64,000 nucleotides of DNA from IMG/VR virus record IMGVR_UViG_3300006931_000029, positions 160,955 to 224,954 of that record. One strand, 5' to 3'. A program made the position numbers and the translations under genes. Shown piece after piece: positions 1,068-41,976 of the stretch. The notes beneath the pieces were generated by a model that saw nothing but the letters and a program-made list of their open reading frames with translations, ran no database searches and was not told the DNA's origin. Position 1 is the first letter of the stretch. Every line of letters begins with the position of its first letter.

Positions 1068-1955
1068 CTAGGCATTAACCTCCGCCATTTTGCTGCGAAC
1101 CTTGTTAGTCATTTTGCTCCGAAGCTTAATTTGCTTCGACCACAACCAGCATCGAATACGATCAGGAAAATTCACGGCTCTCAGCCAGAACCGGTAGAAA
1201 GGAGTGACATACTTCCATTCGCCGAGTGGGCGAGACGGGAGGTGGTTCAGCTTCTTGATGAGACGAAGCATGCGATCGTCATCACGTTCTCTCGACGAGC
1301 ACAAGTTAGCCGCACAGAGTTCTGCGCCGTGCGCAAGCGACAACAACCAAAGGTGTTCGTATCCTGCGGGGCTGAGAATGTGGTCGATTGACCGCTCGCT
1401 CAAACAACCACTCATCTTCAAGATGGTTTGCTTGAGTGGGAACTTACGCGAAGAGAATAGGTCAGTGCCGATGATAGTCATGCGCGGTGCATCGGGTTTC
1501 TGCCATGCGTCCAACGTCTGCTCTGAGCAGCGGATCAGGACGTCGAGAGCCTCGAGAGAGGAGAAACCGACCACCGAATTGTTTGTGAGGAGACCAGAAC
1601 TCCAGTCGTTCATCTTGAAGACTTCGCGGGCACAGGCTGCACGGTTTGCCTTAGGCACAGGCAGCTTGAAGTCCTGACGATTCCAAACCAGCACGTCGGA
1701 GTCGACCCAGTAGACCGCCTCGTAGAGTCCGGTCTTGAGGTGTGACCGAACAAGCTGAAGACGACAGATGTCCGAGCGGGTAACCTTGGTGAAAGGAGCG
1801 CGGCAGTATTGCTTCGCGAAGTCGAACAGTTCGTCACCGACGTAGAGGTACTTGTAACCGCGGATGAACGCCCACGTCTTCACGCTGCTCATGCACGCTT
1901 GAACCCAAGCTGCAGGGTTCGGACGGCTCGACTGGAGGACAAGGATTGGCTTCAT
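1068..1955 (-). CDS. Putative GT-A fold glycosyltransferase (GT34-like)
   Basis: WAFIRGYKY, SDICRLQL and YWVDSDVLV (DxD motif). Confidence 0.55.
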   Translation of the reverse strand: MKPILVLQSSRPNPAAWVQACMSSVKTWAFIRGYKYLYVGDELFDFAKQYCRAPFTKVTRSDICRLQLVRSHLKTGLYEAVYWVDSDVLVWNRQDFKLPVPKANRAACAREVFKMNDWSSGLLTNNSVVGFSSLEALDVLIRCSEQTLDAWQKPDAPRMTIIGTDLFSSRKFPLKQTILKMSGCLSERSIDHILSPAGYEHLWLLSLAHGAELCAANLCSSRERDDDRMLRLIKKLNHLPSRPLGEWKYVTPFYRFWLRAVNFPDRIRCWLWSKQIKLRSKMTNKVRSKMAEVNA

Positions 1956-1958
1956 GGG

Positions 1959-2219
1959 TTAATCTCGGTTGAGTGCTGAAAGCATCATCTTTTTCGCTTC
2001 TTCGAACTTGAGCTTACCAGCTTCCGTCTCACCCTTCTCGACCAGTTTAACGGCTTCGAGATGGACGCGAATGGCGAGAAGCGCTTTGTCGGCTCCCATC
2101 TCGTTCGCGATGATCGCAGCAGCGATGTCCCGGTCTTGGGGCGTCCAAGACGTCGAGTGCCCGAGTCGCACCAAGATGCGATCTGCAGACTTTACGGCTC
2201 TAGTTGGTAGAATGGCCAT
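1959..2219 (-). CDS. Hypothetical protein
   Basis: Helical 86-aa ORF tiling the minus-strand gene array. Confidence 0.6.
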   Translation of the reverse strand: MAILPTRAVKSADRILVRLGHSTSWTPQDRDIAAAIIANEMGADKALLAIRVHLEAVKLVEKGETEAGKLKFEEAKKMMLSALNRD

Positions 2220-2379
2220 TGTTTTGTCCGTGTCGCATTAGCGCGGACGATTGACACCTGTTGTAGACTTTCGATCCATGCGAAATATCACAATGTCAAA
2301 AAACGATAAAGTAAACATCAAAATGTAAACAATTTTCGTTAAGAACTCGCTTCAGTTCATGCCGCTGACTGGTGCAACT

Positions 2380-2988
2380 TCAGCCGAAAGCCGATTGGGC
2401 CGCTGGTTTCTTGCCATGAAGCATAGCACGAAGGTCTACAATCCGCTCCTTGTGACGTTTTATTTTCGTGTGACACTCCGACTCTGCCGTCGCATACATG
2501 TCCATTTGTACCTCTCGCATCCACACGCGAAGGTCGTCGTTTTTGTAGACGAACTCGAGACGCGTAAAAGCTGGATTGTGAGGCTGTAGTTCGGCTCGTT
2601 CGACGTAGAGGTTGGTGAACCGACTCGGGATGCTGATGTCCACTGTCACGCGCTTGTTCTCTTCCTCTTCGCAGTCAGCGAGAATGATGCTGTAAGTCGC
2701 CGTGATGACGCGAGGTGAACTGAAGTCGATTGAGTTTTTGTCCTGCTTCTCGTGATGACCAAGACGAACTTTTTCGAGACTGATCGGTCCGCTCCCTCGG
2801 CTGTACGCGAACGCCAATCCCCTCGGCATTACAAACAGCCATCCATCTTCAATCGCCTTACGAATGGCGTAGTCAAGGTTCGTGCCACGAAATTTCTTGT
2901 TCAGAGTTTCGGCGGCGAGAAGCGTTTGGGCGAAAGCACCTGGCGCTGATTTGAAGACGATGGGTCTGGCTTTGGGTTTCTTGCTCAT
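2380..2988 (-). CDS. Hypothetical protein
   Basis: 202-aa ORF with ATG start, tiling the array. Confidence 0.7.
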   Translation of the reverse strand: MSKKPKARPIVFKSAPGAFAQTLLAAETLNKKFRGTNLDYAIRKAIEDGWLFVMPRGLAFAYSRGSGPISLEKVRLGHHEKQDKNSIDFSSPRVITATYSIILADCEEEENKRVTVDISIPSRFTNLYVERAELQPHNPAFTRLEFVYKNDDLRVWMREVQMDMYATAESECHTKIKRHKERIVDLRAMLHGKKPAAQSAFG

Positions 2989-6288: not shown

Positions 6289-7614
6289 TCAACTGATCCT
6301 GGTGACCTTCAAGAAAGACCCAACCAAGACGTTGCCCGTGCCACTGGTTGCCTTCTTCGCGGTGAGAAACAGGTTGCACGCCGAATTGGGTGCCGTGATC
6401 AGACCACCAAACGTCACAACACCGTTCCCGACTTGTCTGATCATCGCTGTGGATTGGAAACCTTGGGCAGTGATCTGATCAACGACCCGCAGAGCATTCG
6501 CACCCAGCGTGGCCTGTGTGCCTTCCATCCATCCGTTAATGGTAGCGCCAGCGACGCTGCATTGAATACCGAACTGAGCACCTGCCGTCGACGATGATTG
6601 AGCTCCGATAAAACCGTTGAACTCGTAGACCCCGTTAGCGACTAGGGCAACGGTCGAGTCGGTGATCGTCGTGTTGACGGTGGTGTAGGCAGCAACTACG
6701 TCTACCGTTCCCCAGATGCTCGTCGCGCCTTGAAAACCCTGTGGTCCCTGAGCTCCGGTCGTTCCTTGACTGCCCGTAGTTCCGGTCGTCCCTTGGAATC
6801 CTTGCGAACCTTGAGTTCCAGTTCCTCCTTGCAAACCCTGGAATCCTTGAGCACCAGTGCCCGTCGCACCTTGGAATCCCTGGAAACCCTGGTTGCCCGT
6901 CGTGCCTGTCGCACCTTGAACTCCTTGAGAACCGGTCGAACCTCCTACTCCTTGGAATCCTTGAAAGCCCTGACTTCCTGTCGAACCTGTGGCGCCTTGC
7001 AATCCCTGTGATCCGACGCCGGTTGCACCTTGGAAACCTTGACTGCCTTGCGAACCGGTCGTGCCGGTTACGCCTTGAAAACCTTGGCGACCCTGAAATC
7101 CCTGAAAGCCTTGAGCTCCGACGTCGCCTTGAGAACCCGCGCTTCCCTGCAAACCCTGATTGCCCTGCGCCCCGGTGTTTCCAACAACGCCCTGCGATCC
7201 TTGAGAACCGACGGCTCCTTGGGCACCTGTCGCGCCCTGAGAACCTGTCGAACCACCTACTCCTTGGAAACCCTGAGCTCCGACACCAGTCAAACCTTGA
7301 AAGCCTTGGAAACCCTGGTTTCCTTGTGAACCAATCGATCCTTGAACTCCTTGTGAACCGGTCGCTCCTTGCGACCCGACTGCGCCTTGTACGCCCTGAC
7401 TGCCAGTTACGCCTTGAAAACCCTGGTTGCCTACGGCGCCTTGGAAACCCTGCAGCCCACTGGAATACGGCAGAGAATTCCAGCGCGTAACTCCGTCACC
7501 TAGCTTCCACTTGCCGGTGTCAACCTCAACGCCGAGTTCACGTTCAGCGAGAAGAGGATTGATGGCGGTGGCAAGTGCTGCCAACCCGCCACGTTGCTGC
7601 ATCTGCTGGGCCAT
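6289..7614 (-). CDS. Collagen-like fibre protein with an Mtd_N/hyaluronidase-like N-terminus and a C-terminal beta-sandwich
   Basis: LAERELGVEVDTGKWKLGDGVTRWNSLPY N-terminal domain, then about 80 Gly-X-Y triplets (GFQ, GSQ, GAT, GVQ). Confidence 0.85.
   Translation of the reverse strand: MAQQMQQRGGLAALATAINPLLAERELGVEVDTGKWKLGDGVTRWNSLPYSSGLQGFQGAVGNQGFQGVTGSQGVQGAVGSQGATGSQGVQGSIGSQGNQGFQGFQGLTGVGAQGFQGVGGSTGSQGATGAQGAVGSQGSQGVVGNTGAQGNQGLQGSAGSQGDVGAQGFQGFQGRQGFQGVTGTTGSQGSQGFQGATGVGSQGLQGATGSTGSQGFQGFQGVGGSTGSQGVQGATGTTGNQGFQGFQGATGTGAQGFQGLQGGTGTQGSQGFQGTTGTTGSQGTTGAQGPQGFQGATSIWGTVDVVAAYTTVNTTITDSTVALVANGVYEFNGFIGAQSSSTAGAQFGIQCSVAGATINGWMEGTQATLGANALRVVDQITAQGFQSTAMIRQVGNGVVTFGGLITAPNSACNLFLTAKKATSGTGNVLVGSFLKVTRIS
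6725..7460 (-). repeat. 9-bp periodic collagen-coding repeat
   Basis: Recurring ccttg/ccctg/gaaacc units on the plus strand that encode G-X-Q triplets. Confidence 0.85.
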
Positions 7615-7848
7615 TTAGAATGATCCGCCATCGATGGGTGTTGTTCCGCCGTAGTTCGTGTCCCACGTCCCGCCATCAATGTTGCCCATGGACGAGGCTT
7701 GAGCTCCTTGAGAGCCTTGAACACCTTGCGGTCCTGCCACTCCTTGAGGACCCTGCGGTCCAGAAGGAATGCCCGTAAGCGTATCGCCCGGCTGAAGGAG
7801 CTCGAGGTCACCCTGCGGGGTGAGTACGAGTGGTCTCCTCTCGGACAC
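7615..7848 (-). CDS. Small collagen-like protein
   Basis: GPQGPQGVAGPQGVQGSQGAQ with IDGG repeats. The N-terminal RRPLVL...GDLELLQPGD is shared with the neighbouring gene. Confidence 0.75.
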   Translation of the reverse strand: MSERRPLVLTPQGDLELLQPGDTLTGIPSGPQGPQGVAGPQGVQGSQGAQASSMGNIDGGTWDTNYGGTTPIDGGSF

Positions 7849-7851
7849 GCG

Positions 7852-8322: not shown

Positions 8323-8328
8323 TGGAAG

Positions 8329-8805
8329 TTAGAGGAGGATTGGATTGGCGAGAGTAATAAATACCTGCGTTGGTGTGACGACGCTTCCGATCAGCTGATT
8401 CCAACCAGTCGTCGGTGGGATAGTGGAAGGCCACTTGCCATTGGCCCACAATTTTTGGCGTGCTGTCCACTTCCACGCCGGATTTTCGCACACGCCGTAG
8501 AAGCATACGACAACGCTCATGCCGGGCCACGCTTCGTCAAGAGCAACGCCGGCCAAAAGATTCATGTTGTCGAGGTCGCTGCTGTCGCATCGATAACCGT
8601 CTGTCGTCACCAACGAATACGCCTCGATGTGGGCATTCGCCGTCATAGTGAGAAGACCGGCATTAACCGTTGACCCGACGTCGCCCGGTATACCTCCTCC
8701 ACTGCCGTCAAGTCCTCTGGCGCCTTGTGGTCCTTGAGGACCAGGCGTACCTCGAGCGTCGAGGCCTCTTTCAATTCCAGGAAACGGTATTTGGACTACT
8801 TGCAC
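8329..8805 (-). CDS. Virion protein with a short collagen segment and a decoration-type domain
   Basis: GTPGPQGPQGARG, LAGVAL, NPAWKW, QLIGSVVTPT. First gene after the GTAGGTAG motif. Confidence 0.6.
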   Translation of the reverse strand: MQVVQIPFPGIERGLDARGTPGPQGPQGARGLDGSGGGIPGDVGSTVNAGLLTMTANAHIEAYSLVTTDGYRCDSSDLDNMNLLAGVALDEAWPGMSVVVCFYGVCENPAWKWTARQKLWANGKWPSTIPPTTGWNQLIGSVVTPTQVFITLANPILL

Positions 8806-8825
8806 TCACTACCTACCGGCTAAAA

Positions 8826-9146
8826 TCAAGCCGTAACTTCTCGGTCAGAGACTGGAGCAGCAGGTATTAAGTTACCTGTTACAGTAGGTTCTTTCGTACC
8901 TATCGGGACTGTGACTGCTGGGGTAGTTGACTTCAGAGCGTTCATCAGAAACACGGTGAGCACGATCAACGCTTGCGTGTTGTCGATGACCAAGATTTCA
9001 CCCTTCTTGACACAGTTGACAGTCCAGACTCCGAGGATGTCGATGATGATCAACGCGCCAACCCATTGGCCCCATTTCGATGTATCGCCGAGACGAGATT
9101 TGATCGCGTCGTAGAATGACTGTAGGAAGTTCATCATGGTCATCAT
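8826..9146 (-). CDS. Membrane protein with two TM segments (holin-like)
   Basis: Two hydrophobic segments and multiple N-terminal Met codons. Confidence 0.45.
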   Translation of the reverse strand: MMTMMNFLQSFYDAIKSRLGDTSKWGQWVGALIIIDILGVWTVNCVKKGEILVIDNTQALIVLTVFLMNALKSTTPAVTVPIGTKEPTVTGNLIPAAPVSDREVTA

Positions 9147-9154
9147 TTATGCAT

Positions 9155-9187
9155 AAAAACAGGGCGACCCGTTTCCGAGTCGCCCTG
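9155..9187 (-). terminator. Rho-independent terminator
   Basis: CAGGGCGACTCG-GAAA-CGGGTCGCCCTG-TTTTT on the minus strand, just after the stop at 9205. Confidence 0.85.
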
Positions 9188-9204
9188 GTTCAAAAACGAT
9201 CTGG

Positions 9205-9687
9205 TTAGACCGTCGGCGCGTCCGGAACGACCGGAGTAGCCGGAGCATCCGGCACCACGTCGGCCAGCGCTTGCGCAGAGGCCGACAGAGAGTTCAACGA
9301 GGAAAGGAATGCCTCGTCCGTGACGTTCGGGTCTTGAGCGTCGGCGATCAACTGGTCGATCTGCGCCTGCATGGCGGTGACCTTCGCGTTGATCTCTCCG
9401 AGAGCTTCTGCGTTCTTGGCTGCGGCTGCAGCAATGGCTGTTTTGATTTCGCTGAGTTTCATATTGATTTCTTGGATTTCCTGACGTAGTGAATTCAGGT
9501 CGTCTTTGGTTGGTGCATTCAGCAAGTGGGACCTGAACCACTCGAGAATGAAAAAGAGAGCGCCATCGCCCGTGGTAGGCAATGACACTGCGGGTCCTGG
9601 CGGACCTTGTTCTCCGCGCTCTCCTGGTTGACCCTGCGGTCCTGTGTCGCCTTTTGGTCCTGGCGGACCTGGATGGTGATCGTGCAT
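9205..9687 (-). CDS. Collagen plus coiled-coil protein
   Basis: MHDHHPGPPGPKGDTGPQGQPGERGEQGPPGP followed by a heptad helix. ATG at 9687 lies 2 nt after the upstream stop. Confidence 0.65.
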   Translation of the reverse strand: MHDHHPGPPGPKGDTGPQGQPGERGEQGPPGPAVSLPTTGDGALFFILEWFRSHLLNAPTKDDLNSLRQEIQEINMKLSEIKTAIAAAAAKNAEALGEINAKVTAMQAQIDQLIADAQDPNVTDEAFLSSLNSLSASAQALADVVPDAPATPVVPDAPTV

Positions 9688-9689
9688 GG

Positions 9690-10583
9690 TTACGGAATTA
9701 TCGTGACGGTTATTTTCTGACTGACAGTGGAGCCTGCGGTGTTTGAGACCGAGCACATATAGACACCACCGTCGGAGGCCTGCGCAGATGCGACGGAAAA
9801 GACTTGGTTCGTTGATCCTTGGATTGGCGTTCCGTTCTTGAACCATTGGAAAGAAAGTGGTGGTGATCCTTCAGAATCGGCTGATAGGGTGAGGAGTTGT
9901 CCTACCTTAACTGTCGTAGCCAAGGCGAGTTTCACTGATCCGGCTGGTGCAAATGCAACGTAGACAAATTTGGTGCCATCGCTAGCAAGGAGTTGTCCTG
10001 CGTGATTGGCAGGATCAGGAAGTCCTGAAACACCCGGAGGTCCTTGCGGGCCGACGTCACCCTTCGGTCCTTGTACGCCGATGCCTGGCAATCCCGGGTC
10101 GCCTTGATCGCCTTTCGGACCTTGCGGGCCTGGAGGTCCTGGAATTCCGGTAGGCGGAGGAGGTGGCGTTACACCAATCGACACCGACGAACCAACCTTC
10201 GTCTTCAGCTTTGCACCATCTTCCATGGTGATGGTAACTCCAACCAAGGGCGAGAGATTGTTCGACCCGAGTGTAGCGCTGAATCCTCCGCTCACGTTGT
10301 TCGCGACGACGATCGCAATACCGCCGGCCGATTTGACTACGTTAATCTTGTCAAGGACACTGTTGACACCTCGATCAAGCAAAACAATTTTGCCAGCCCA
10401 CGCAGCGTCTGCCGATTGGCCGAGTCCGCCGTAAACCAAAACAGCTGTGGTCGCAACCTTCGGCGTGCCAGTGACGTAGACGGCAGGGTATGCGTCAGGC
10501 GTTGCAAAGACGTAGACAGCGTCTGCGGCCGCCAAAAACGGTAACAGAAATAGGAATCCCAAGAAAACGGTAAGGCGCTTCAC
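9690..10583 (-). CDS. Secreted PA-domain + collagen + Ig-like protein
   Basis: Signal peptide; GKIVLLDRG...[18 protein letters not shown] (PA domain); GPP/GPQ repeats; [13 protein letters not shown]...[15 protein letters not shown] (Ig I-set). Confidence 0.8.
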
Positions 10584-20122: not shown

Positions 20123-20593
20123 TTAATAGCCGCGCAGTTCGTCTCGAACTTCCATCAACAAATGGCCCAACTTATTTTGGCCAACGCCGTCGCACACGCC
20201 CCAAAAGTGGTCGCTCCACCAATTTTTCTCTTCAAGAAATTTCTGCCCCGTGTCCAGCAGCGCTCGCCTCATCTGTTCGTTGGCGTACTTGGCCCGAAGC
20301 ACGTCGCGCATGACGTCGACCTTCCGGGTCTCCCAATCGGCGGTAAGCTTTGCCGTCTGCCCTTTGGTCTTTGCCTGGAATGGTGAGCAGCCCTTGAAGT
20401 AAGACCGAGCATTCGGCCAATGATCTTCCTTTGGCCACTTCGCCGCCTGGTAGGCGTTCTCGCTGGACGGAAAGAACTCGCCCTCGTAGTGGAGGGGAGT
20501 CGGAAACATGTTCGACAACCAGCGATACGGGCCGAAGAACCCTCGAATCACCAGGTCGTTGTGGACGTACTCGAAGTCAGGTGGGATTCTCAC
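20123..20593 (-). CDS. NADAR (YbiA-like) family protein
   Basis: WLSNMF...FPSSENAYQAAK...WETRKVDVM...KY...LLDTG...DHFWG...GQNKLGHLLMEVR. Confidence 0.9.
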   Translation of the reverse strand: MRIPPDFEYVHNDLVIRGFFGPYRWLSNMFPTPLHYEGEFFPSSENAYQAAKWPKEDHWPNARSYFKGCSPFQAKTKGQTAKLTADWETRKVDVMRDVLRAKYANEQMRRALLDTGQKFLEEKNWWSDHFWGVCDGVGQNKLGHLLMEVRDELRGY

Positions 20594-20879: not shown

Positions 20880-21563
20880 CTAACTGACGCCGGCGTGGAG
20901 TTGGCGCATCTGATCCGGCGAGAGCCAGTGGTATCCGAGTTGGGTTCTTGCGAAAGACATCGGATGGTTCAGGGTTTCCGGCGCCATCGTGTGGAGCAGG
21001 AAGGTGTCGTACATCAAGACGTCACCGATGGCCCGCCACCAATAGCCGATCGTCACGTCCGCGTAACCGTTCCAGGTTGGGTTTGGATGGTTGCCAATGT
21101 AGTCGAACAGGCGTTTAACCAGCGCGGCGCTGATGGCAAATCCCGCACCTCCGGCGTAGTACTGGACGTGGATGTCGGTCTTCTCACCGTGCATGCTGTC
21201 TCTGTACTTGTCCTTGTCCGGTGAAAACCAGAATGGCCAGCCAGTTGCGATCGACCGTCCTGGTTGCCGACCCACCATTACCTCCTCGAGATGGAGGACC
21301 AGGTTGTTGACGAGCACGTAGCCATCATCATCGGCGAAGTAGTACCAGTCTTGGGTCGGATCGTAGTTGCTCCTGTCTTTGAAGAAGGCAACGTACTTCA
21401 ACGCCATGTTGTCGTAGCCGATGGCCGTGCCATAGCCGACCTTCTCGGGACCGGGTTCGTCGCTGAGGAAGACGAAGTTTTGTCCCTTCAACCAAGTCTC
21501 TCGCTGGGCTTTCTGCCGCTCAAGGTACTTTTCGCAAGTCAGTAGGACGTATTTGATCTTCAC
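20880..21563 (-). CDS. Fringe-like (GT31) glycosyltransferase
   Basis: RETW, WYYFADDDGYV..NL, YYAGGAGFAIS, ADVTIGYW, YHW. No TM anchor. Confidence 0.85.
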   Translation of the reverse strand: MKIKYVLLTCEKYLERQKAQRETWLKGQNFVFLSDEPGPEKVGYGTAIGYDNMALKYVAFFKDRSNYDPTQDWYYFADDDGYVLVNNLVLHLEEVMVGRQPGRSIATGWPFWFSPDKDKYRDSMHGEKTDIHVQYYAGGAGFAISAALVKRLFDYIGNHPNPTWNGYADVTIGYWWRAIGDVLMYDTFLLHTMAPETLNHPMSFARTQLGYHWLSPDQMRQLHAGVS

Positions 21564-22057
21564 GGCTGCTTGCGTTTGCGCGTGGGTAAAACGTATCCCT
21601 GAGCTTTAGCAAAATCTCTCAGCTGGTTCGCCGCCGCTTCAATCTCTGCATCGGTCACGCCGTCGTCGGTGTCGTCCCAAATGGCGGAAATTTGTTGCTG
21701 GTAATACTCGGTGTCTGAGAAGTCTACCACCGATTCTCCGGTCTTCAAACTGTCCAGATTGACCTTGGAAAAGATACGAAATAGCTCCTCGACTGGAGGA
21801 AGTTTTCTCTTCTCCGGAGCGTTATTCGACGCCCATGCCTTCAGCTTATCGATCTCGTCGGCGCCATAAGCTTGGTCTTCGTCTTCTTGCTGAATCGAAT
21901 TCCAGTCATCGTCGTCCAGCGCCAAGATAAGGCGTTTGAGTTCGGCCTCGTCCTTGATCCTCACGCCTAACTCGATCGCCAACCGATGAGCCAAGCTCAG
22001 AATCGGATCGATGTGGTTCTCCGCAAGCAGCTTCTCGACGAGGTCTTCTGGTTTCAT
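21560..22057 (-). CDS. Acidic protein with an MKPEDLVEKLLAE N-terminus
   Basis: Shares its N-terminal motif with 13364-13633. Confidence 0.6.
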   Translation of the reverse strand: MKPEDLVEKLLAENHIDPILSLAHRLAIELGVRIKDEAELKRLILALDDDDWNSIQQEDEDQAYGADEIDKLKAWASNNAPEKRKLPPVEELFRIFSKVNLDSLKTGESVVDFSDTEYYQQQISAIWDDTDDGVTDAEIEAAANQLRDFAKAQGYVLPTRKRKQP

Positions 22058-22095
22058 GGCTGTGTTTTAACCACTTCAGCTGCGTTTTGTAAACA

Positions 22096-22740
22096 TTATT
22101 TCCTCAGCCATCCGGTATGGTTCGGAGTCTGCCAGTTAGGAAGGTAGCCGATCTTCCTGAAGTGGTCGTGCACTGCCTTCTGGACTCCGGTGTAACCCCA
22201 ATCGTCGACGATCAAGATGCCGCCCGGTACCAGTTTGTCCCACAGATAGTCCATGGCCACAACCGTCGGGTCGTGCATGTCCATATCAAGGCGGAGCATT
22301 GCAATCGGACCTGGTTGATTGTCCGGCAACGGCAGAGTGTTCTGAATCCATCCCTCGACCAACCGGAACTGTTCGAATGGCAGGTTCAGCTCGATGATGT
22401 GGTTCTCGACGTCGGTTCGCCGGTGCGCCGTGATCCCACTCGACACGAGGAGGTCTTCAGGTAGTTCGCGATTCGGGTCGAGCTTGTCGCCGAATCCCGG
22501 CTGGTATTCGTCGTGGCGACCGGCCAGTTGAATGCCTTCGAAAGAATCGTAACCCCAAACCGTCTTCGTCTTGGCCGCGAGGTGCATTGCAATGATGGAT
22601 GAACCCATCGCGACGCCGCACTCAACCAAATCTCCTTCCAGGTTAGACGCTTCTTGTGCGAGACGATACGTCTCTTGAAGCGTGGATTCGAAACCGTAGA
22701 AACGGTGGAGGATTTTCTTGAGGATTTCCTGGTCGGTCAT
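22096..22740 (-). CDS. TylF/MycF/NovP-family O-methyltransferase
   Basis: EGDLVECGVAMG, WGYDSFEG, VEGWIQNTLP, IAMLRLDMDM, LVPGGILIVDDW. Confidence 0.9.
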   Translation of the reverse strand: MTDQEILKKILHRFYGFESTLQETYRLAQEASNLEGDLVECGVAMGSSIIAMHLAAKTKTVWGYDSFEGIQLAGRHDEYQPGFGDKLDPNRELPEDLLVSSGITAHRRTDVENHIIELNLPFEQFRLVEGWIQNTLPLPDNQPGPIAMLRLDMDMHDPTVVAMDYLWDKLVPGGILIVDDWGYTGVQKAVHDHFRKIGYLPNWQTPNHTGWLRK

Positions 22741-23531
22741 TCGTTAAGTACCGGCTTGGTCTTCTTCCACTCCTCGATCAGGTAGCAGAGGCGCTCGTAC
22801 TCCAGCTCGTCGATACTCAACAGCGTGAGCCACGTCTTGAAGTAGTTGTCCAACTCTTGGGCGCGAGGATGCGTCTGCTTGTGATAAATCTCAAAGTCCT
22901 TCCTGTTTTGAACCTTGTCGGCGATCAGCATCTGCTTCACCTCGGGCAGTGGCGACATGGTCAAACTCTGCAACTCGTCGAAGCTGAGGTAGGAGTTGGC
23001 CGTGCGACGGTACTCCATGGCGAGGATGATGACGCTGATGCCATCGTTAGCCACGCCGTGAACCAGCCAGTTTCGATGAACCGAATCCAGGTCCATGGAG
23101 TGTTCCAGGTTCACGTCGTCTTGCACGAACGGGTGCAGGCAAAAGGCCATCATCGCATTTGGCGTGGCTCCGATCGCCTTCAAGACGACGATCCCTTCGT
23201 CGATGTGGTTGATGTACGGAACGCCGGACCGCTGGGCTTTCTTCTCGGCGTAGAATCCTTTGATCGCTGCGTACGAGCAGGACTTGGTAACGTCCCACGC
23301 GATCGGTTCGACGGGCTCCATCTCGTCGTAGCAATAGGCGCCGGTGTGTTGGCTTTCGTCGTGCTTGACGAACCAAACGTCGCCTCCGTGACCGGGCACG
23401 TGACCGACAACGGTACCCTTTATGCCGATCTCTCGGCACTCTAGATGCCGAGGCACGATCATCATTCCGTCTGTGGTTCCGAGTTTAGCAATCCTGACCT
23501 TCAAGTAGGGTTTGACGTCGTTGCAGTTCAT
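22737..23531 (-). CDS. HD-like domain protein with a small N-terminal beta domain
   Basis: AQRSGVPYINHIDEG, AFCLHP, LIADKVQNRKDF. Confidence 0.55.
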   Translation of the reverse strand: MNCNDVKPYLKVRIAKLGTTDGMMIVPRHLECREIGIKGTVVGHVPGHGGDVWFVKHDESQHTGAYCYDEMEPVEPIAWDVTKSCSYAAIKGFYAEKKAQRSGVPYINHIDEGIVVLKAIGATPNAMMAFCLHPFVQDDVNLEHSMDLDSVHRNWLVHGVANDGISVIILAMEYRRTANSYLSFDELQSLTMSPLPEVKQMLIADKVQNRKDFEIYHKQTHPRAQELDNYFKTWLTLLSIDELEYERLCYLIEEWKKTKPVLNE

Positions 23532-37603: not shown

Positions 37604-38155
37604 TTATTTCTTCTTGAGGTCGACGTCGTCGTCCTTGCCGGTCTTGAACGCAGTATCGGTTCTAGACGAGGTGACGAGCTTCACGTTGATCTTCTCGAAG
37701 CCGAACATTCGCAACAGGATATTGGAGGGAAAGACGTCGAGCATCGTGTTGTACTCTCGGCCGATGTCGACTAGAGCCACCTGATTTGCTGTCCACTCGT
37801 CGCGAGAACCAGTGATGATGTTTTGCAGATTCTTGAACACCGACGTATCGACCTGAGGAATCGCCTCACGAACGGCATTGATGAACGATCCGCTGTTTCC
37901 ACCGGATCGGGCTTGAGCATAGCCGACAAAGATTTCCTTCAGCGCGTCCTTCTGCGCGTCGGTCACTTGGGCCGACTGGCTGATCTTCTTCCACATGTTG
38001 TCGAAGACCGTCGTATTCGCTTGCTCCTTGGCAGAGATTTGGTTCTTGAGCGACTGAGCCCGGTTGTAAATGCCGACACCCCACATTGCGCCGATGCCAG
38101 CGAACAGAATAAAGCCACCGACGAGGATGGCTCCGATGATTAGGAATTTTTTCAT
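37604..38155 (-). CDS. LemA-like membrane-anchored protein
   Basis: N-terminal TM, YN, coiled coil, REYNTMLDVFPSNILLRMFGF. Confidence 0.65.
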   Translation of the reverse strand: MKKFLIIGAILVGGFILFAGIGAMWGVGIYNRAQSLKNQISAKEQANTTVFDNMWKKISQSAQVTDAQKDALKEIFVGYAQARSGGNSGSFINAVREAIPQVDTSVFKNLQNIITGSRDEWTANQVALVDIGREYNTMLDVFPSNILLRMFGFEKINVKLVTSSRTDTAFKTGKDDDVDLKKK

Positions 38156-38470: not shown

Positions 38471-38526
38471 ATTCAAACAACTTAAGGGAAAATGTAAACA
38501 AAAATGTTTACGGACTTGGAGGTTCT
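38471..38526. promoter_or_regulatory. Divergent promoter region with an inverted repeat
   Basis: Minus strand: TTTACA-N16-TTGAAT-N8-ATG(38462). GTAAACA-AAAA-TGTTTAC inverted repeat. Plus strand: GTTCT 7 nt before GTG 38534. Confidence 0.65.
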
Positions 38527-38533
38527 TTCTGGC

Positions 38534-38914
38534 GTGCATTTCGTCACCATTTACACTAAGGTTGGCCCGAAGCTATCGAACTGGCTGACGGCGAAAGGTG
38601 TGACCGACGACGAGTGGTTGAAGTGGTGTCTTCGAGACCGAGATTCGAAGGACTTCACCGCAATTGTCGATGAGCTGGAAGAGGCAGCAACAGCTGCCGA
38701 GGTCTTAGTTTCGCCGATCCTTGAGGTGGAACGCTACATCATGGAATCCACGGAGAAAGTCGAACTGCTTATTGAACGCAGAAAGCTGGTATTAACGTCG
38801 AGACCGAAGCACTACGCTAGCTCGGAACTCATTTCGAGATTCATCTCAAAGTGGTTTGAGATTTTGGACAAAGAAGCCGCTAGCGATCTTTCCGCCACAC
38901 GACCCACTTCTTAA
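38534..38914 (+). CDS. Hypothetical protein
   Basis: Plus-strand ORF behind a GTTCT motif. Its 3' end overlaps the sigma-factor gene. Confidence 0.55.
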   Translation: MHFVTIYTKVGPKLSNWLTAKGVTDDEWLKWCLRDRDSKDFTAIVDELEEAATAAEVLVSPILEVERYIMESTEKVELLIERRKLVLTSRPKHYASSELISRFISKWFEILDKEAASDLSATRPTS

Positions 38915-39788
38915 GCTGGTTGATAGCGTCCTGCCGTATCTGACAGATACGCGATTCAGTGACCTTGAACTCCTCAGCTATCTGCCACAGTCGCATGCCC
39001 TCGAAGTAGTTCATCCGCAAGATGGTTTGCCATTGGTCGGGTAACCGGCTGATGTGGGTTTTCAGCAAGCCAACCAGCTCTGCTTCCTGCATTGAGTCTC
39101 TTGCAAGAACGTCCTGGGTGTCTGCCAGAGACTCGTGAAGAGATACGCCGTGTTCCTCACTTTCGCTGATGAAATCGATAGACGTGAACGTTTGAGGACG
39201 GGCTTCTTCGACCATTTTTCTGTACTCGGTTGGCGTCAAGTTCATCTCGGCCATGATCTCGGTCGCCGTCGGGTCTCGTTGCAGTTTTTGCGTCAACGTT
39301 GCGACAACTTCTTTTAGAACCCGGTTTCTAGCTCGAGCTCGACGAGGAACCCAATCCATCCTCCTAAGCTCGTCTAGGATAGCTCCTCGAATTCTCATGG
39401 AAGCGTACCCTTTGAACGAAGAAGCTCTGGCAGCGTCGTACTTCTTCGCTGCCGCCATCAACCCGGTTATTCCTACGCTGTGCAGGTCGTCTGCGTCGAT
39501 GTGTGCAGGAAGATTTAGTTTGATCCGGTCCACGACCTGTCGGACGAGGTACATGTGTTGCACAAGAAAATCTCCGCTAGTTGCCTCCGCGGTTACTTCT
39601 TGCCTCTTCCTCTTAGGTTTAACGATCAGCTCGTGAGGAGCTTGGTTCACCTGCTCCCTAGGAACGACCGGTTGAAAAATGTCAAGGCGGTGCCGAGGCG
39701 CCACCATGATCGGTGGACCGTCGACGACAACTTGAATAATCTCGAAAGCGTCGTCCTCGACTGTGAGTAGGACGAGCGTTGAGTTCAC
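38880..39788 (-). CDS. RNA polymerase sigma factor, FliA/WhiG family
   Basis: DDLHSVGITGL..AAKKYD...FKGYASMRIRGAILDELRRMDWVPR (region 2), region 3, and IAEEFKVTESRICQI (region 4). Confidence 0.9.
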   Translation of the reverse strand: MNSTLVLLTVEDDAFEIIQVVVDGPPIMVAPRHRLDIFQPVVPREQVNQAPHELIVKPKRKRQEVTAEATSGDFLVQHMYLVRQVVDRIKLNLPAHIDADDLHSVGITGLMAAAKKYDAARASSFKGYASMRIRGAILDELRRMDWVPRRARARNRVLKEVVATLTQKLQRDPTATEIMAEMNLTPTEYRKMVEEARPQTFTSIDFISESEEHGVSLHESLADTQDVLARDSMQEAELVGLLKTHISRLPDQWQTILRMNYFEGMRLWQIAEEFKVTESRICQIRQDAINQLKKWVVWRKDR

Positions 39789-40633
39789 GACATGGAGTTG
39801 AGGTCCACGAGTTTTCGCATAACATCCTCCACCGTGTCGCAGTGGATGACGCGATCCTTCGAGGAAAACTTCTTTTGAATCTGTTCGACTTGAAAACGCG
39901 TGATGAGTCCGTCCATAATGACGGCGTAATCGACCACAACGGCAGGAGTGTTTCTGGTATTGGCGTCGCAGAACGTGGCGTCTATTCTCAAGAGGTTTTT
40001 GGACTTCTCTTGCACGATAGACTGAGCTGTCGGTAACAATCCAAGAACCAGCACCCGACGTCGACCATCCTCAGCGGGACTCGGGTCGACGACCGAAGCA
40101 GCCTTGATGACGATCGGCTCCGGCACAGGCGCAACAGCTTCCACTCTGACCACTTCTGGCGGTAACTTTGGAAGGGATGGTAGACCAACGCCGGACTTGA
40201 GCAAGCGGTCCAGGGCAAAGCCGTACAACACCGGCGTAGGAACCTCGGCAAGGATACGTGTGAGGTCCGGCTTTTCTGCCTTTGGCACTCTGAACTCGAT
40301 GACGAACGGCGCGCCTGCTGGTTTAGAAGGAGCAGCCGACACTTCGACTTCGGGCTCAGGAGTCGGTCGCGGTGCGCTGACGGGTGCAGCTCCACCGGCC
40401 ACAGACCTGTCAAAGTAGCGCTTCTCGAACTGCTTTAAGGCCATCTTGATGTCGTTCTGGGCTTCCCAGTTCAACAGAGAAAATGCTTTGATGTCTCGGC
40501 GCCGTTCTGGAGGAAAGGCCTCTTCCATCGCCTTAGTGAGAACCTCGGTGATCGGCGCCATCATATCGCGAATGCGCGCTTCGAGGAATTTCTCAGCTAG
40601 GGCTTTTGTCTCAGCGGGTGTCCATCGGATCAT
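39785..40633 (-). CDS. Hypothetical protein with Pro-rich linkers
   Basis: 282-aa ORF, 4-nt overlap with the sigma-factor gene. Confidence 0.65.
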   Translation of the reverse strand: MIRWTPAETKALAEKFLEARIRDMMAPITEVLTKAMEEAFPPERRRDIKAFSLLNWEAQNDIKMALKQFEKRYFDRSVAGGAAPVSAPRPTPEPEVEVSAAPSKPAGAPFVIEFRVPKAEKPDLTRILAEVPTPVLYGFALDRLLKSGVGLPSLPKLPPEVVRVEAVAPVPEPIVIKAASVVDPSPAEDGRRRVLVLGLLPTAQSIVQEKSKNLLRIDATFCDANTRNTPAVVVDYAVIMDGLITRFQVEQIQKKFSSKDRVIHCDTVEDVMRKLVDLNSMS

Positions 40634-40639
40634 CGTGGC

Positions 40640-41395
40640 CTAGATTGGGTTGTAGCCAAGAACTGGAGTCCACTTTGTCGAGAGTCTTTTCAAGTCTCGG
40701 GCGACTAGAGCGTTGTCGAACAGCGCGTGATTGTTTTGAATTGAACCGAATTTGAAGTGAAGACAGTCCATCCCGAGCAGCACACTCTGAAGTCCGGCAT
40801 GCTTTGCCTTAAGAGCGTAGTCGTCCCACCAGTACCATCCTTCGTAGTCCATGTCAGGACCGCCGATTTTTTCGATGAGCTTTCTGGTATAGACAACCGG
40901 ACCTGTGTTCATCTGAGACCGAGGAACATATTCGCCGATGGCAAGCTTCTTCCTTGCCGTATCCGACGAACTGAATGGCGATGACACCATGTTAGTGTAG
41001 TTTCGCTCGTAACCGTCGCGACCGCTGATCCATCCTAGGTTGTCACCGTACTCTTCCATGATCCGGCGGATGTCGTCGACGATGGTTTTACCTACGAATT
41101 TGTTGTCGTCGTGAGGCACGATTAGATAGTCACAGTCGGTGTCCATGAACCGACTGATAAGACGGCTGTGGACGCCGTGCTCCAGGACGTGAGTGCTTGA
41201 AGAATCGTACGACCACGAGTAGTCGATCAGGAGAGTGGGCGCTAGCTCGAGGAAATTGAGCATCGACCGGTCAGTGCACGCCTCGAAAAAGAAAGAGACG
41301 TGACTGCCCTTTGGGAAACAATCGGTAATGCCGGTGATCATCCACTCGATCATGTCCTGCTTGCCGAAAACGCCAACACCAATCATTGCCTTCAT
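40640..41395 (-). CDS. GT2-like glycosyltransferase
   Basis: CDYLIVPHDD, LIEKIGGPD, WWDDYALKAKHAG. Confidence 0.75.
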   Translation of the reverse strand: MKAMIGVGVFGKQDMIEWMITGITDCFPKGSHVSFFFEACTDRSMLNFLELAPTLLIDYSWSYDSSSTHVLEHGVHSRLISRFMDTDCDYLIVPHDDNKFVGKTIVDDIRRIMEEYGDNLGWISGRDGYERNYTNMVSSPFSSSDTARKKLAIGEYVPRSQMNTGPVVYTRKLIEKIGGPDMDYEGWYWWDDYALKAKHAGLQSVLLGMDCLHFKFGSIQNNHALFDNALVARDLKRLSTKWTPVLGYNPI

Positions 41396-41976
41396 AGTTT
41401 TTTCGCGACGGTTAGCGAAAAACCTTCGCCGATGATTTGCCACGCAGATTGGTCGTAGACTTTTTCCTGAGCAACTCTCGACGGTCCAGGATGGAACTTA
41501 GGTCCTCCTGGCCGTGACATTCTGGAATCATGAATAGCGAAGATTCCTCCCTGCTTAAGTAAGGGAACCCATTGGTTGTAGTCTCTCAGCACCGCCTCGT
41601 AAGCATGGTCGCCGTCGATAAACAAGAAGTCCAGTGGTTCTGTCCACGTAGGAGCAATCTTTTCCGAGAAATCTTTGACAAACGTCCAGCGCGAACCGAA
41701 CGGCTTGAGATTGTTCAGCAGGCGTGGTTCATTACCCTTAAGGCTTGACTCCATTGAATCAGCGACTAGTGGATCGACTGACGTGAGATGAAGATCGGAC
41801 ACTGTCAAGATAACGCACGAGCTGAATCCGTCAAGACAGCCAATCTCTACGCCCTTGCCGCCGACTCCGGCTAAAACACGTTTGAACAGATCGCATTCTT
41901 CACCAGCAAGTCCGGAAAACGTGAGCGGGTCAAGATGCGGGATTTCGAGTGCCATTTTCCTACCTAAGGACAGCAA
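41392..41976 (-). CDS. Class I SAM methyltransferase (Methyltransf_24-like)
   Basis: VEIGCLDGFSS, LDFLFIDGDHAYEAV..D, LKQGGIFAIHD. Start is either TTG 41976 or ATG 41955. Confidence 0.85.
   Translation of the reverse strand: MLSLGRKMALEIPHLDPLTFSGLAGEECDLFKRVLAGVGGKGVEIGCLDGFSSCVILTVSDLHLTSVDPLVADSMESSLKGNEPRLLNNLKPFGSRWTFVKDFSEKIAPTWTEPLDFLFIDGDHAYEAVLRDYNQWVPLLKQGGIFAIHDSRMSRPGGPKFHPGPSRVAQEKVYDQSAWQIIGEGFSLTVAKKL

What the first reader, a model, noticed from the sequence alone, without database searches (positions are those of the whole stretch)
1068..41976. Dispersed glycan-building toolkit, including a Fringe/GT31 enzyme, beside Ser/Thr-rich fibres
Seen: three glycosyltransferases (1068-1955, 20880-21563, 40640-41395) and two methyltransferases (TylF 22096-22740, Methyltransf_24 41392-41976). 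Two loci pair a GT with an MTase. None has an obvious signal peptide or N-terminal membrane anchor. The collagen fibre and Ig-repeat proteins are rich in Ser/Thr. Established: GT31 enzymes extend O-glycans and TylF enzymes methylate sugar hydroxyls, and some phages and giant viruses glycosylate virion proteins. Inference: cytoplasmic synthesis of an O-methylated glycan on virion fibres. DNA or host-surface modification are alternatives.
Basis: partly seen in the sequence, partly recalled or inferred. Interest (0 to 1): 0.6.

Follow-up and report, generated by a model that had tools for sequence, protein, structure and literature searches.

The report
Phage glycan-building and sugar-methylating enzyme kit

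Summary
All five enzymes are real. 20880-21563 is a stand-alone GT31/Fringe enzyme with an intact DDD motif. 22096-22740 is a TylF sugar O-methyltransferase. 41392-41976 is Methyltransf_24. 40640-41395 is GT2-like by structure only. 1068-1955 is a retaining-type GT-A, shown only by an alignment-based AlphaFold model whose best PDB match is PBCV-1 A64R. None has a membrane segment.

The kit is larger than reported: 7 GTs and 5 methyltransferases genome-wide, with no nucleotide-sugar synthesis genes found for the three families searched.

The fibre target is not supported by window evidence. GT and collagen proximity is marginal (p=0.05 to 0.47). The window loci sit in early-type accessory operons, next to an NADAR gene and a sigma factor.

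Two concrete alternative acceptors emerged. The first is DNA: a dCMP-hydroxymethylase, kinase, GT and FkbM-methyltransferase cluster at 12-20 kb resembles known DNA-glycosylation clusters. The second is a secreted protein: the 1068-1955 GT belongs to a mobile three-gene cassette with a chymotrypsin-like protein and a secreted PEP-CTERM-like protein.

Best reading (about 0.35): cytoplasmic synthesis of O-methyl-capped glycans mainly on 5-hmC DNA, with the cassette GT serving its secreted partner. Fibre glycosylation remains a live rival (about 0.3).

The parts
1068..1955 (-). P0001: soluble GT-A glycosyltransferase of the retaining GT34/GT8/GT32-like type, with a long basic C-terminal helix and pI 9.7
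   Evidence: Invariant W83xD85xD87 and D62xxR65. AF2 pLDDT 87.8. Foldseek best hits are PBCV-1 A64R at E 5e-9, then XXT1, UGGT, GT6, LgtC, glycogenin and Och1. Viral GT34/GT8-like hits in BFVD. pI and hydropathy.
231..1043 (-). P0173: 270-aa cassette partner with a conserved His, Asp, Ser pattern and GDSGSP, typical of chymotrypsin-fold proteases. No signal peptide.
   Evidence: No Pfam, PHROG or NCBIfam hit. Motifs are invariant in 4 homologues. 68% identical to the L003 copy.
1..197 (-). 5' part of P0172 (full gene C1:160396-161151): secreted protein with a Sec signal peptide and a PEP-CTERM-like C-terminal anchor. Third gene of the cassette.
   Evidence: Translation. PF07589 scores 15.1 bits, E 0.0099, the only match in the genome but below the 20.7 cut-off. 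Two homologues carry precomputed PF07589. VPEP, hydrophobic and basic tail conserved in 4 homologues.
2305..2345 (-). Two tandem copies of the TGTTTAC promoter-like motif upstream of the 86-aa gene and the P0001 cassette
20880..21563 (-). Stand-alone soluble GT31 (Fringe/Galactosyl_T) glycosyltransferase, GTG start overlapping the stop of the 165-aa gene (GTGA)
21560..22057 (-). 165-aa acidic protein of unknown function, first gene of the Fringe operon
   Evidence: No family hit. Part conserved in sister phages.
22058..22095 (-). Promoter-like site (TGTTTACA, ~17 nt, TAAAAC, ~6 nt, ATG) between TylF and the 165-aa gene
20123..20593 (-). NADAR-domain protein, last gene of the 165-aa, Fringe, 76-aa and NADAR co-directional run
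   Evidence: Pfam NADAR E 8.9e-20.
22096..22740 (-). TylF-family metal-dependent sugar O-methyltransferase, ATGA-coupled to the upstream 264-aa gene
   Evidence: Absent at this position in sister loci.
22737..23531 (-). 264-aa protein, phrog_21276 (unknown function), conserved with Fringe in sister phages (53% identity)
40640..41395 (-). GT2-like GT-A glycosyltransferase (HDD and WDDY motifs). The ATG at 41395 overlaps the MT24 stop (ATGA).
41392..41976 (-). Methyltransf_24 class I SAM methyltransferase
39785..40633 (-). 282-aa protein of unknown function between the GT2-like gene and the sigma factor
   Evidence: No family hit.
38880..39788 (-). Phage sigma-70-family factor, GTGA-coupled to the 282-aa gene and so in one gene run with MT24 and the GT2-like gene
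6289..7614 (-). Collagen-like fibre protein with an Mtd_N domain. 80 triplets of G-[SFAVT]-[QT], Thr at 25% of Y positions, no Lys and 1 Pro.
8329..10583 (-). Cement-like (weak) protein and a PA, collagen and Ig protein: a decoration or fibre cluster
60254..64000 (+). PA14, PKD and Ig protein longer than 1248 aa (runs off the contig end), 23.7% Ser+Thr

Best explanation
The five window genes are working, soluble enzymes of a genome-wide kit. The kit has 7 glycosyltransferases and 5 SAM methyltransferases. No GLF, epimerase or nucleotidyltransferase gene was found. The kit should build short, O-methyl-capped oligosaccharides in the cytoplasm of the infected cell from host nucleotide sugars.

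In the window they form three separate small operons of the accessory, probably early, gene class. They are not a fibre-linked pathway.

Most likely acceptors:
(i) Fringe/TylF (locus B) and the GT2-like and MT24 pair (locus C): the glycan that the phage puts on its own DNA. A cytosine-specific hydroxymethylase cluster at C1:12-20 kb makes 5-hydroxymethyl-dC. That cluster holds dCMP deaminase, a GT, the hydroxymethylase, an FkbM methyltransferase, a Tmk-like kinase and a GT9. A primary GT there would attach the first sugar. The dispersed GT-A enzymes would extend it and the O-methyltransferases would cap it, protecting the DNA from host nucleases.
(ii) The GT at 1068-1955: it works with its own mobile cassette and probably glycosylates the secreted PEP-CTERM-like protein before export.

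Shown: enzyme identities, motifs, operon couplings, the hydroxymethylase cluster, the cassette.
Inferred: every acceptor assignment, early timing, and methylation of sugar rather than base or protein.
For: 1. The hydroxymethylase. Best PDB relatives are CMP 5-hydroxymethylase MilA (E 3e-21) and T4 dCMP hydroxymethylase (E 2e-13), against thymidylate synthase at 1e-4. It lies far below the NCBIfam ThyA cut-offs. T4 C148 and D179 are conserved, and the E. coli D169 position is Asp, not the 5-hydroxyC Asn signature (PMC13326640 section 28).
2. Its neighbours are dCMP deaminase, a GT (PHROG 14945, E 5e-9), an FkbM MTase, a Tmk-like kinase and a GT9. DLP3, RB69 and RL38J1 have the same layout, and RL38J1 also has three dispersed DNA GTs (PMC13326640).
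3. Secondary DNA-glycan GT-A enzymes have PBCV-1 A64R as top PDB hit (10.1101/2023.12.21.572611). P0001 has the same top hit.
4. A promoter class with 21 sites against 0.7 expected has 13 sites in the window region. It drives the Fringe operon and the P0001 cassette but not the collagen cluster.
5. Fringe lies in one gene run with NADAR. That family reverses ADP-ribosylation of DNA bases and is used by phages against DarTG (PMC11543638, PMC11825919).
6. GT560-like genes adjoin Fringe-like genes in 3 of 80 viral loci.
7. The cassette is the only block shared with L003, L098 and L100. There it is contiguous with GT9, FkbM, Methyltransf_24, Methyltransf_11 and GT2 genes.
Against: 1. No window GT lies within 140 kb of the hydroxymethylase, whereas DNA-hypermodification genes usually cluster.
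2. None of 80 viral Fringe-like loci has a ThyA-family gene within 10 kb, at single-sequence sensitivity.
3. Neither DNA-glycan paper I read reports an O-methylated sugar on DNA ('O-methyl' has 0 occurrences in the one I term-searched).
4. Seven GTs are more than any known DNA glycan needs.
5. L003 and L100 show a C5 DNA methylase but no hydroxylase near the cassette.
6. The hydroxymethylase cluster itself lacks the TGTTTACA promoter class, so co-regulation with it is not shown.
7. Early timing is inferred only from the sigma-70-like look of the promoter.
8. Outside the window, a GT2-MTase fusion and a GT9 adjoin collagen genes. At least part of the kit may therefore serve fibres.
Confidence: 0.35

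Rival explanations
1. Virion glycosylation. The GTs O-glycosylate Thr/Ser of collagen-like fibres (GxT triplets) and Ig, PKD and PA14 proteins in the cytoplasm before assembly. The MTases cap the glycan. This would resemble chlorovirus capsid glycans, Mimivirus fibrils or mycobacteriophage capsid and tail-tube glycans.
For: - The genome has about 9 collagen-like genes. Thr fills 25% of Y positions in the window fibre.
- The PA14/PKD protein is at the 99.6th S+T percentile.
- A GT2-Methyltransf_11 fusion lies 35 bp downstream of a collagen gene on the same strand. A GT9 lies less than 1 kb from two collagen genes, near the gp25 and portal genes.
- P0001's best structural match is the capsid-glycosylating A64R. 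A064R also fuses GT and MTase domains (PMC9614988).
- Fringe-like GT31 genes occur in giant-virus MAGs.
- Phage virion glycosylation has a precedent (cited in PMC12619734).
Against: - Proximity is marginal or absent statistically (p=0.05, 0.16, 0.47).
- No window GT adjoins a fibre gene.
- The window GT operons share a promoter class with accessory genes, not with the collagen cluster.
- Only 3 of 80 viral Fringe loci have a collagen-like ORF nearby.
- The P0001 cassette occurs in L003 and L098 with no collagen gene in the ~17-21 kb fetched around it.
- The A64R fold match is equally typical of DNA-glycan GTs.
Confidence: 0.3
2. Host-surface remodelling. The whole kit decorates secreted or envelope glycoconjugates of the infected cell, such as the PEP-CTERM-like protein, EPS, or LPS-linked intermediates at the inner face of the membrane. 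The purpose could be to block superinfection or to alter biofilm or floc matrix.
For: - The P0001 cassette encodes a signal-peptide protein with a PEP-CTERM-like anchor.
- In ~65-kb phages the same enzyme families surround that gene in one contiguous cluster.
- The GT9 genes are weakly related to LPS heptosyltransferases.
- Non-viral Fringe relatives sit with GLF, GT4, GT90 and Methyltransf_24 in polysaccharide-like clusters.
- PEP-CTERM proteins are thought to be linked to EPS through glycosylation (PMC9850573).
Against: - No enzyme has a TM segment.
- I saw no polyprenyl-phosphate GT, flippase or polymerase, though not every gene was scanned.
- PF07589 is below its cut-off and TIGR02595 does not match.
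- Only locus A has any link to a secreted protein.
- Surface remodelling is typical of temperate phages, and this genome looks lytic. That judgement is my inference, because no integrase search was run.
Confidence: 0.15
3. No common pathway. The loci are independently acquired morons with unrelated substrates, such as small molecules, host proteins or RNA. The GT and MTase pattern is coincidence.
For: - The neighbourhoods are mosaic. TylF is absent in sister loci and Fringe's neighbours differ between relatives.
- Distant P0001 relatives are solitary genes in housekeeping contexts.
- Most viral Fringe loci show no recurrent partner.
Against: - The same families are contiguous in L003 and L100.
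- GT31 with Methyltransf_24/TylF recurs in L016, L017, L019 and L072.
- A GT and an MTase lie close together or fused at four places in one genome.
Confidence: 0.1

Closest known systems
Pre-replicative DNA glycosylation clusters of T4, RB69, DLP3 and Rhizobium phage RL38J1 (ThyA homologue, nucleotide kinase and GTs)
   Same: - The ThyA-family enzyme is closest to MilA and T4 gp42, with the catalytic Cys and the cytosine-specifying Asp.
- A Tmk-like kinase and GTs lie adjacent, and dCMP deaminase is nearby.
- Further GTs are dispersed, as in RL38J1.
   Different: - The window GTs are GT-A (GT31, GT2-like, GT34/8-like) and lie 140 kb or more away.
- Five O-methyltransferase-type genes accompany them.
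- No UDP-sugar synthesis genes were found.
- No chemistry has been measured.
Metavirome 5mYOX/ThyS-associated GT gene clusters (10.1101/2023.12.21.572611)
   Same: - Mono- to trisaccharides are built on 5-hmC from the host metabolome by successive GT-A and GT-B enzymes.
- The secondary GT-A enzymes have PBCV-1 A64R as top PDB hit, like P0001.
- Heptose was among the sugars, and this genome has two GT9 genes.
   Different: - This genome has no TET/JBP and no C5 methylase.
- No sugar methylation is reported there.
- The window enzymes are not adjacent to the base-modifying enzyme.
Chlorovirus PBCV-1 A064R (GT, GT and MTase) and A061L, which build the capsid N-glycan
   Same: - These are virus-encoded soluble GT-A enzymes plus SAM sugar O-methyltransferases working in the cytoplasm.
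- A64R is the best fold match of P0001.
- The genome also has a GT-MTase fusion.
   Different: - It is a eukaryotic virus and its acceptor is the major capsid protein.
- Sequence identity is only 14-15%, and the fold match is shared with many retaining GT-A enzymes.
Mycobacteriophage virion glycosylation (Freeman et al. 2023, as cited in PMC12619734 and PMC11256854)
   Same: Phage-encoded GTs modify phage structural proteins.
   Different: The hosts are actinobacteria and the acceptors are capsid and tail-tube C-termini. I could not read the paper, so no gene-level comparison was made.
Metazoan Fringe, core-1 GalT and B3GNT (CAZy GT31)
   Same: Pfam Fringe and Galactosyl_T are above cut-off, and the DDD and GGAGF motifs are present.
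   Different: - It has no type II membrane stem and is only 227 aa.
- It belongs to a small clade of stand-alone ~205-235-aa proteins (194 clusters) that is common in viral contigs.
- The acceptor is unknown.
PEP-CTERM/exosortase protein sorting
   Same: P0172 has a signal peptide plus a VPEP motif, a hydrophobic helix and an Arg/Lys tail, and two homologues pass Pfam PF07589.
   Different: It is phage-encoded. P0172 itself is below the Pfam cut-off and TIGR02595 does not match. The host and its exosortase are unknown.

Membership tests
CAZy GT31 / Pfam Fringe and Galactosyl_T (20880-21563) | Profile match above the curated cut-off | tested here: met
   31.9 bits against a cut-off of 21, and 27.6 against 23.
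CAZy GT31 / Pfam Fringe and Galactosyl_T (20880-21563) | DDD metal and nucleotide-sugar motif and the GGAG(F) motif | tested here: met
   D78-D80 and G138-G139 are invariant in 35 relatives. They align to the DDD of C1GalT1 and B3GNT2.
CAZy GT31 / Pfam Fringe and Galactosyl_T (20880-21563) | N-terminal membrane stem (typical of eukaryotic members, not catalytic) | tested here: not met
   Maximum KD19 is 1.14 and the protein starts directly with the first beta-strand.
TylF sugar O-methyltransferases (22096-22740) | Profile match, plus conserved Asp residues at the positions I recall as the metal site of NovP and MycF | tested here: met
   85.3 bits against a cut-off of 23. LRLD and VDDW align with LRLD and IDDY of 4cdz. 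The assignment of these Asp residues to the metal site is from my memory of the NovP and MycF structures.
Methyltransf_24 (41392-41976) | Profile match above cut-off | tested here: met
   70.5 bits against 26.3 and 71.8 bits in the genome search. Sugar rather than DNA as substrate was not tested. PHROG 2675 is labelled 'DNA methyltransferase'.
GT-A fold, retaining GT8/GT24/GT32/GT34 group (1068-1955) | GT-A Rossmann-like fold with a DXD motif | tested here: met
   AF2 pLDDT 87.8. 230 PDB matches at E 1e-3 or lower, all GT-A among the top 50 listed. WxDxD is invariant.
GT-A fold, retaining GT8/GT24/GT32/GT34 group (1068-1955) | Sequence membership of a named CAZy or Pfam family | tested here: not met
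   No hit in Pfam, NCBIfam, PHROGs or the PDB profile search.
GT2 (40640-41395) | Profile match to Glycos_transf_2 | tested here: not met
   No Pfam hit at E 0.01 or lower. PF00535 and PF13641 genome searches hit elsewhere.
GT2 (40640-41395) | GT2-like GT-A fold | tested here: met
   The Atlas model (pTM 0.82) matches GT2 clusters at TM 0.76-0.82.
Phage DNA-glycosylation system | Enzyme that creates a hydroxylated pyrimidine acceptor | tested here: met
   C1:14971-15714 is a cytosine-type hydroxymethylase. It lies outside the window.
Phage DNA-glycosylation system | GT genes clustered with that enzyme | tested here: not met
   Met for the 560-aa GT and the 493-aa GT9. Not met for any of the three window GTs, which lie 146 kb or more away.
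Phage DNA-glycosylation system | Glycosylated nucleoside in virion DNA | not testable with these tools
   Needs LC-MS of DNA.
Virion (fibre) glycosylation system | Genetic linkage or co-regulation of GTs with structural genes | tested here: inconclusive
   2 of 7 GTs lie within 1 kb of a collagen gene (p=0.05), and none of these is in the window. The window GT operons use a different promoter class from the collagen cluster.
Virion (fibre) glycosylation system | Glycan on virion proteins | not testable with these tools
   Needs glycoproteomics.
PEP-CTERM proteins (P0172, window 1-197 and upstream) | Signal peptide plus C-terminal PEP motif, TM helix and basic tail recognised by the family model | tested here: inconclusive
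   PF07589 scores 15.1 bits, below the 20.7 cut-off, and TIGR02595 gives no match. Two homologues pass. The motif is conserved in 4 homologues.

The most novel reading that the evidence does not exclude
The dispersed GT-A enzymes and the TylF, Methyltransf_24 and FkbM methyltransferases together write an O-methylated oligosaccharide onto 5-hydroxymethylcytosine in the phage DNA. To my knowledge that would be the first methylated sugar in a DNA hypermodification. It would be encoded by modules scattered over 200 kb rather than by one cluster.
Probability: 0.18. Interest if true: 0.8.

Novelty: new variant of a known kind. Interest (0 to 1): 0.5.

Why it matters
Phage glycosyltransferases are known to protect DNA, reshape host surfaces or coat virions. 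It is rarely possible to say which from sequence alone.

This genome combines an unusually large kit (7 GTs and 5 sugar-type methyltransferases) with three candidate acceptors in one phage: 5-hmC DNA, collagen-like fibres and a secreted PEP-CTERM-like protein.

If the methyltransferases cap a DNA-linked glycan, that extends the chemistry of DNA hypermodification and of resistance to nucleases. If they cap a fibre glycan, it would be a phage counterpart of giant-virus fibril and capsid glycans.

The mobile GT, protease-like and PEP-CTERM-like cassette suggests that phages may feed proteins into the host exosortase pathway. All of this can be tested by heterologous expression, because the kit appears to rely on host nucleotide sugars.

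Tried and rejected
TECHNICAL DEAD ENDS
- Single-sequence AF2 of P0001 failed (pLDDT 35). It was redone with an alignment.
- PDB sequence and profile searches gave nothing for P0001, P0002 or the collagen-adjacent GT9. I therefore could not tell whether the GT9s resemble protein- or LPS-heptosyltransferases.
- Megablast and tblastn against the phage records gave nothing for the Fringe locus, Fringe, the 508-aa ORF or P0172. The DNA polymerase is only ~25% identical to any isolate.
- IMG/VR scans gave nothing for the GT2-MTase fusion or for Fringe as a single query. They gave one locus for the P0001 family and one weak locus for P0002.
- The 35-sequence Fringe alignment was too diverse to scan with.
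- The metagenome scan with P0002 returned only the genome itself and one fragment.
- The sister-phage record could not be searched whole.
- Generic sigma-70 and terminator scans were no better than shuffles.

REJECTED IDEAS
- Hydroxylysine-type (animal or Mimivirus) collagen glycosylation: the long collagen repeats have no Lys, or at most 3 of 32 triplets in one gene, and very little Pro.
- TET/5mYOX-dependent DNA modification in this genome: no Tet_JBP, C5 methylase or 2OG-FeII_Oxy_5 match.
- A 5-hydroxycytosine synthase: the diagnostic position is Asp, not Asn.
- PurZ and a Z-genome: the PurA-like protein scores 190 bits on PurA models against 40 on PurZ.
- Phage-made special sugars: no GLF, epimerase or nucleotidyltransferase.

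UNVERIFIED FROM MEMORY
- That PDB 6g7d is the mycobacterial methylmannose-polysaccharide 1-O-methyltransferase. A paper search for the code found nothing.
- BclA-type GxT O-glycosylation with methylated sugars.

I met no human-like contig and used no alternative genetic code.

Full report
SETTING
The window is the last 64 kb of a single 224,954-bp virus record with direct terminal repeats, estimated complete. It is a jumbo phage of about 54% GC with no close isolate. Its DNA polymerase is only ~25% identical to the nearest phage records, and several genes find nothing at all. Two sister contigs of 225.5 and 229 kb exist in metagenomes. My ORF call gives 347 genes covering 93% of the genome.

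THE FIVE ENZYMES
- 20880-21563(-) matches Pfam Fringe and Galactosyl_T above cut-off. It carries the GT31 DDD and GGAGF motifs, which are invariant across 35 relatives and align to C1GalT1 and B3GNT2.
- It belongs to a small clade of stand-alone 205-235-aa proteins: 194 clusters at E 1e-3 or lower among 1.84 billion representatives. The clade is frequent in viral contigs, including giant-virus MAGs, with at least 106 relatives in IMG/VR. A Fringe-like GT in a virus is therefore not unique.
- 22096-22740(-) is a TylF enzyme (E 5e-24). Its nearest solved relatives are two unnamed O-methyltransferases, NovP and MycF.
- 41392-41976(-) is Methyltransf_24 (E 2.5e-19). Its only PDB relative is a 'methyltransferase domain protein', 6g7d.
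- 40640-41395(-) has no Pfam hit, but its Atlas model superposes on GT2 clusters at TM about 0.8.
- 1068-1955(-) has no profile hit anywhere. With 17 homologues the alignment shows invariant WxDxD and DxxR. The AF2 model is confident (pLDDT 87.8). It matches retaining GT-A enzymes, best PBCV-1 A64R (E 5e-9), then GT34, GT24, GT6, GT8 and GT32, and viral GT34/GT8-like proteins.
- None of the enzymes has a TM-grade segment.

OPERON STRUCTURE
- MT24 and the GT2-like gene overlap by ATGA. A 282-aa gene follows, GTGA-coupled to the phage sigma factor.
- The 264-aa gene and TylF overlap by ATGA. The 165-aa gene and Fringe overlap by GTGA.
- A 38-bp gap with a promoter-like site separates TylF from the 165-aa gene.
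- In two sister loci Fringe (74%) and the 264-aa gene (53%) are conserved, but TylF is absent at that position.
- So one 'pair' is a true coupled pair. The other is a looser, accessory association.

THE KIT IS LARGER THAN REPORTED
Outside the window I found:
- a GT2-Methyltransf_11 fusion 35 bp downstream of a 633-aa collagen gene;
- two GT9 genes above the Pfam cut-off, one less than 1 kb from two collagen genes and near the gp25 and T4-like portal genes;
- a 560-aa GT (PHROG 14945, E 5e-9);
- an FkbM methyltransferase.

That makes 7 GTs and 5 MTases. I found no GLF, epimerase or nucleotidyltransferase, so host nucleotide sugars must be used.

THE FIBRES
The window collagen protein has an Mtd_N domain and 80 triplets of G-[SFAVT]-[QT]. 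Thr fills 25% of Y positions, there is no Lys and only one Pro. That fits Thr O-glycosylation but not hydroxylysine chemistry. The Ser/Thr-richness claim holds. Proximity of the 7 GTs to the 5 long collagen genes is marginal: p=0.05 within 1 kb, 0.16 within 5 kb, 0.47 for the median. The two close cases are both outside the window.

A DNA ACCEPTOR
- C1:14971-15714 is a ThyA-family protein. Its best solved relatives are CMP 5-hydroxymethylase MilA (E 3e-21) and T4 dCMP hydroxymethylase (E 2e-13), not thymidylate synthase (1e-4). It scores far below the ThyA equivalog cut-offs.
- T4 C148 and D179 are conserved, and the position equivalent to E. coli D169 is Asp. By the rule in PMC13326640, this indicates 5-hmC rather than 5-hydroxyC.
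- Around it lie dCMP deaminase, the 560-aa GT, the FkbM MTase, a Tmk-like kinase and a GT9.
- This is the layout of the DNA-glycosylation clusters of DLP3, RB69 and RL38J1. RL38J1 has three dispersed DNA GTs.
- In the metavirome study, DNA glycans reach trisaccharides and include heptose. The secondary GT-A enzymes have A64R as top PDB hit. The A64R match of P0001 therefore does not favour capsid over DNA.

A SECRETED ACCEPTOR
- P0001 is the first gene of a three-gene cassette. That cassette is the only thing this genome shares with three ~65-68-kb viral contigs, L003, L098 and L100.
- The second gene (window 231-1043) conserves a chymotrypsin-like His, Asp and GDSGSP pattern.
- The third gene straddles the window start. 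It has a Sec signal peptide and a C-terminal VPEP motif, hydrophobic stretch and basic tail. Pfam PEP-CTERM finds this one site in the genome but below cut-off. Two homologues pass.
- In L003 and L100 the cassette is contiguous with GT9, FkbM, Methyltransf_24, Methyltransf_11 and GT2 genes. The families that are dispersed here therefore form one cluster elsewhere.

REGULATION AND NEIGHBOURS
- A promoter-like architecture consists of a T-tract, TGTTTACA, ~17 nt, a TAnnAT-like hexamer, and then an ATG within ~10 nt. It occurs 21 times against 0.7 expected. Thirteen sites lie in the window region and two in the first 100 kb.
- It precedes the 165-aa, Fringe, 76-aa and NADAR run and the P0001 cassette. 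It does not occur inside the collagen, cement and Ig cluster or the hydroxymethylase cluster.
- NADAR enzymes reverse ADP-ribosylation of DNA bases, and phages use them against DarTG.
- Sister loci carry an Acb2/Tad1-hairpin gene, BubE and an ATP-grasp gene nearby.
- The window GT loci therefore sit in accessory, counter-defence-style territory.

FAMILY CONTEXTS
- Distant Fringe relatives sit beside Methyltransf_24/TylF, GT4, GT90 and GLF genes.
- Among 80 viral loci, 5 have a related MTase, 3 a GT560-like gene, 3 a collagen-like ORF and none a ThyA-like gene within 10 kb, at single-sequence sensitivity.
- Distant cellular P0001 relatives are solitary genes and give no information.

VERDICT
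The fibre acceptor is not supported by window evidence.
- I rank the acceptors for loci B and C as DNA-linked glycan (about 0.35), virion proteins (about 0.3), host or secreted glycoconjugate (about 0.15), and unrelated functions (about 0.1). For locus A the secreted cassette partner is the leading candidate.
- None of these can be settled without chemistry.

Noticed in passing
G000 C1:12201-19643 (outside the window; loci L005, L014): A 5-hmC-type DNA modification cluster: dCMP deaminase, a 560-aa GT, a cytosine-type hydroxymethylase (C1:14971-15714), an FkbM methyltransferase on the opposite strand, a Tmk-like kinase and a 493-aa GT9.
   Followed up: yes
window 1-1955 plus C1:160396-160954: A mobile three-gene cassette shared with three otherwise unrelated ~65-68-kb viral contigs. 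It holds a GT-A, a chymotrypsin-like protein and a secreted PEP-CTERM-like protein. A phage-encoded PEP-CTERM-like protein is unusual and hints at a host that has an exosortase.
   Followed up: partly
61 TGTTTAC sites genome-wide; in the window e.g. 2311, 2325, 6245, 20097, 22089, 29500, 38494, 45252, 47674, 49463, 54601, 58618: A strong phage promoter-like class: T-tract, TGTTTACA, ~17 nt, a TAnnAT-like hexamer, then the start codon within ~10 nt. Many transcripts may therefore be leaderless or nearly so. 21 strict sites against 0.7 expected, concentrated at 160-220 kb.
   Followed up: partly
window 20123-20593 (-): An NADAR-domain protein (E 8.9e-20) in the same gene run as Fringe. It is a likely counter-defence enzyme against DarT-type DNA ADP-ribosylation.
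   Followed up: partly
C1:114999-118236 (L011:6999-10236): A GT2-Methyltransf_11 fusion protein (433 aa) 35 bp downstream of a 633-aa collagen-like gene on the same strand. This is the best single candidate for a fibre-glycosylating enzyme in the genome.
   Followed up: partly
C1:40005-47448 (L007): A 374-aa GT9 next to two collagen-like genes, gp25-like baseplate wedge and a T4-like portal gene. A helicase lies on its other side.
   Followed up: partly
C1:54365-62830 and C1:132581-132656: An array of about 36 tRNA genes plus a tmRNA gene with a tag peptide ending in LRLAA, and a separate tRNA with a CUA (amber-reading) anticodon.
   Followed up: no
window 50138-51469 (-): A divergent adenylosuccinate synthetase homologue. 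It scores 190 bits on PurA models and 40 on PurZ. Its best PDB matches are bacterial PurA entries (3hid, 1ade), so there is no evidence for a Z-genome.
   Followed up: partly
window 38880-39788 (-): A sigma-70-family factor with regions 2, 3 and 4, translationally coupled to the MT24, GT2-like and 282-aa gene run.
   Followed up: no
window 37604-38155, 52542-53678, 56412-57335: A LemA-family protein, a weak protein-kinase-like ORF (below cut-off), and a DUF932 protein.
   Followed up: no
L001 and L002 (sister phage loci): In the sister phages Fringe is followed by a weak 2OG-Fe(II) oxygenase on the opposite strand. An R2K ATP-grasp, a PP-binding carrier protein, an Acb2/Tad1-hairpin protein and BubE are nearby. 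None of the first three was found at the matching place in the window.
   Followed up: no
genome-wide: C1:41747-44513, 116335-118236, 136181-141371; window 6289-10583: About nine collagen-like genes with G-x-Q and G-x-T triplets that almost lack Pro and Lys. One carries an Mtd_N domain and one PA and Ig domains.
   Followed up: partly
window 60254-64000 (+): The PA14/PKD/Ig ORF runs off the end of the contig. The record has direct terminal repeats, so the ORF may continue at the start of the genome. I did not check this.
   Followed up: no
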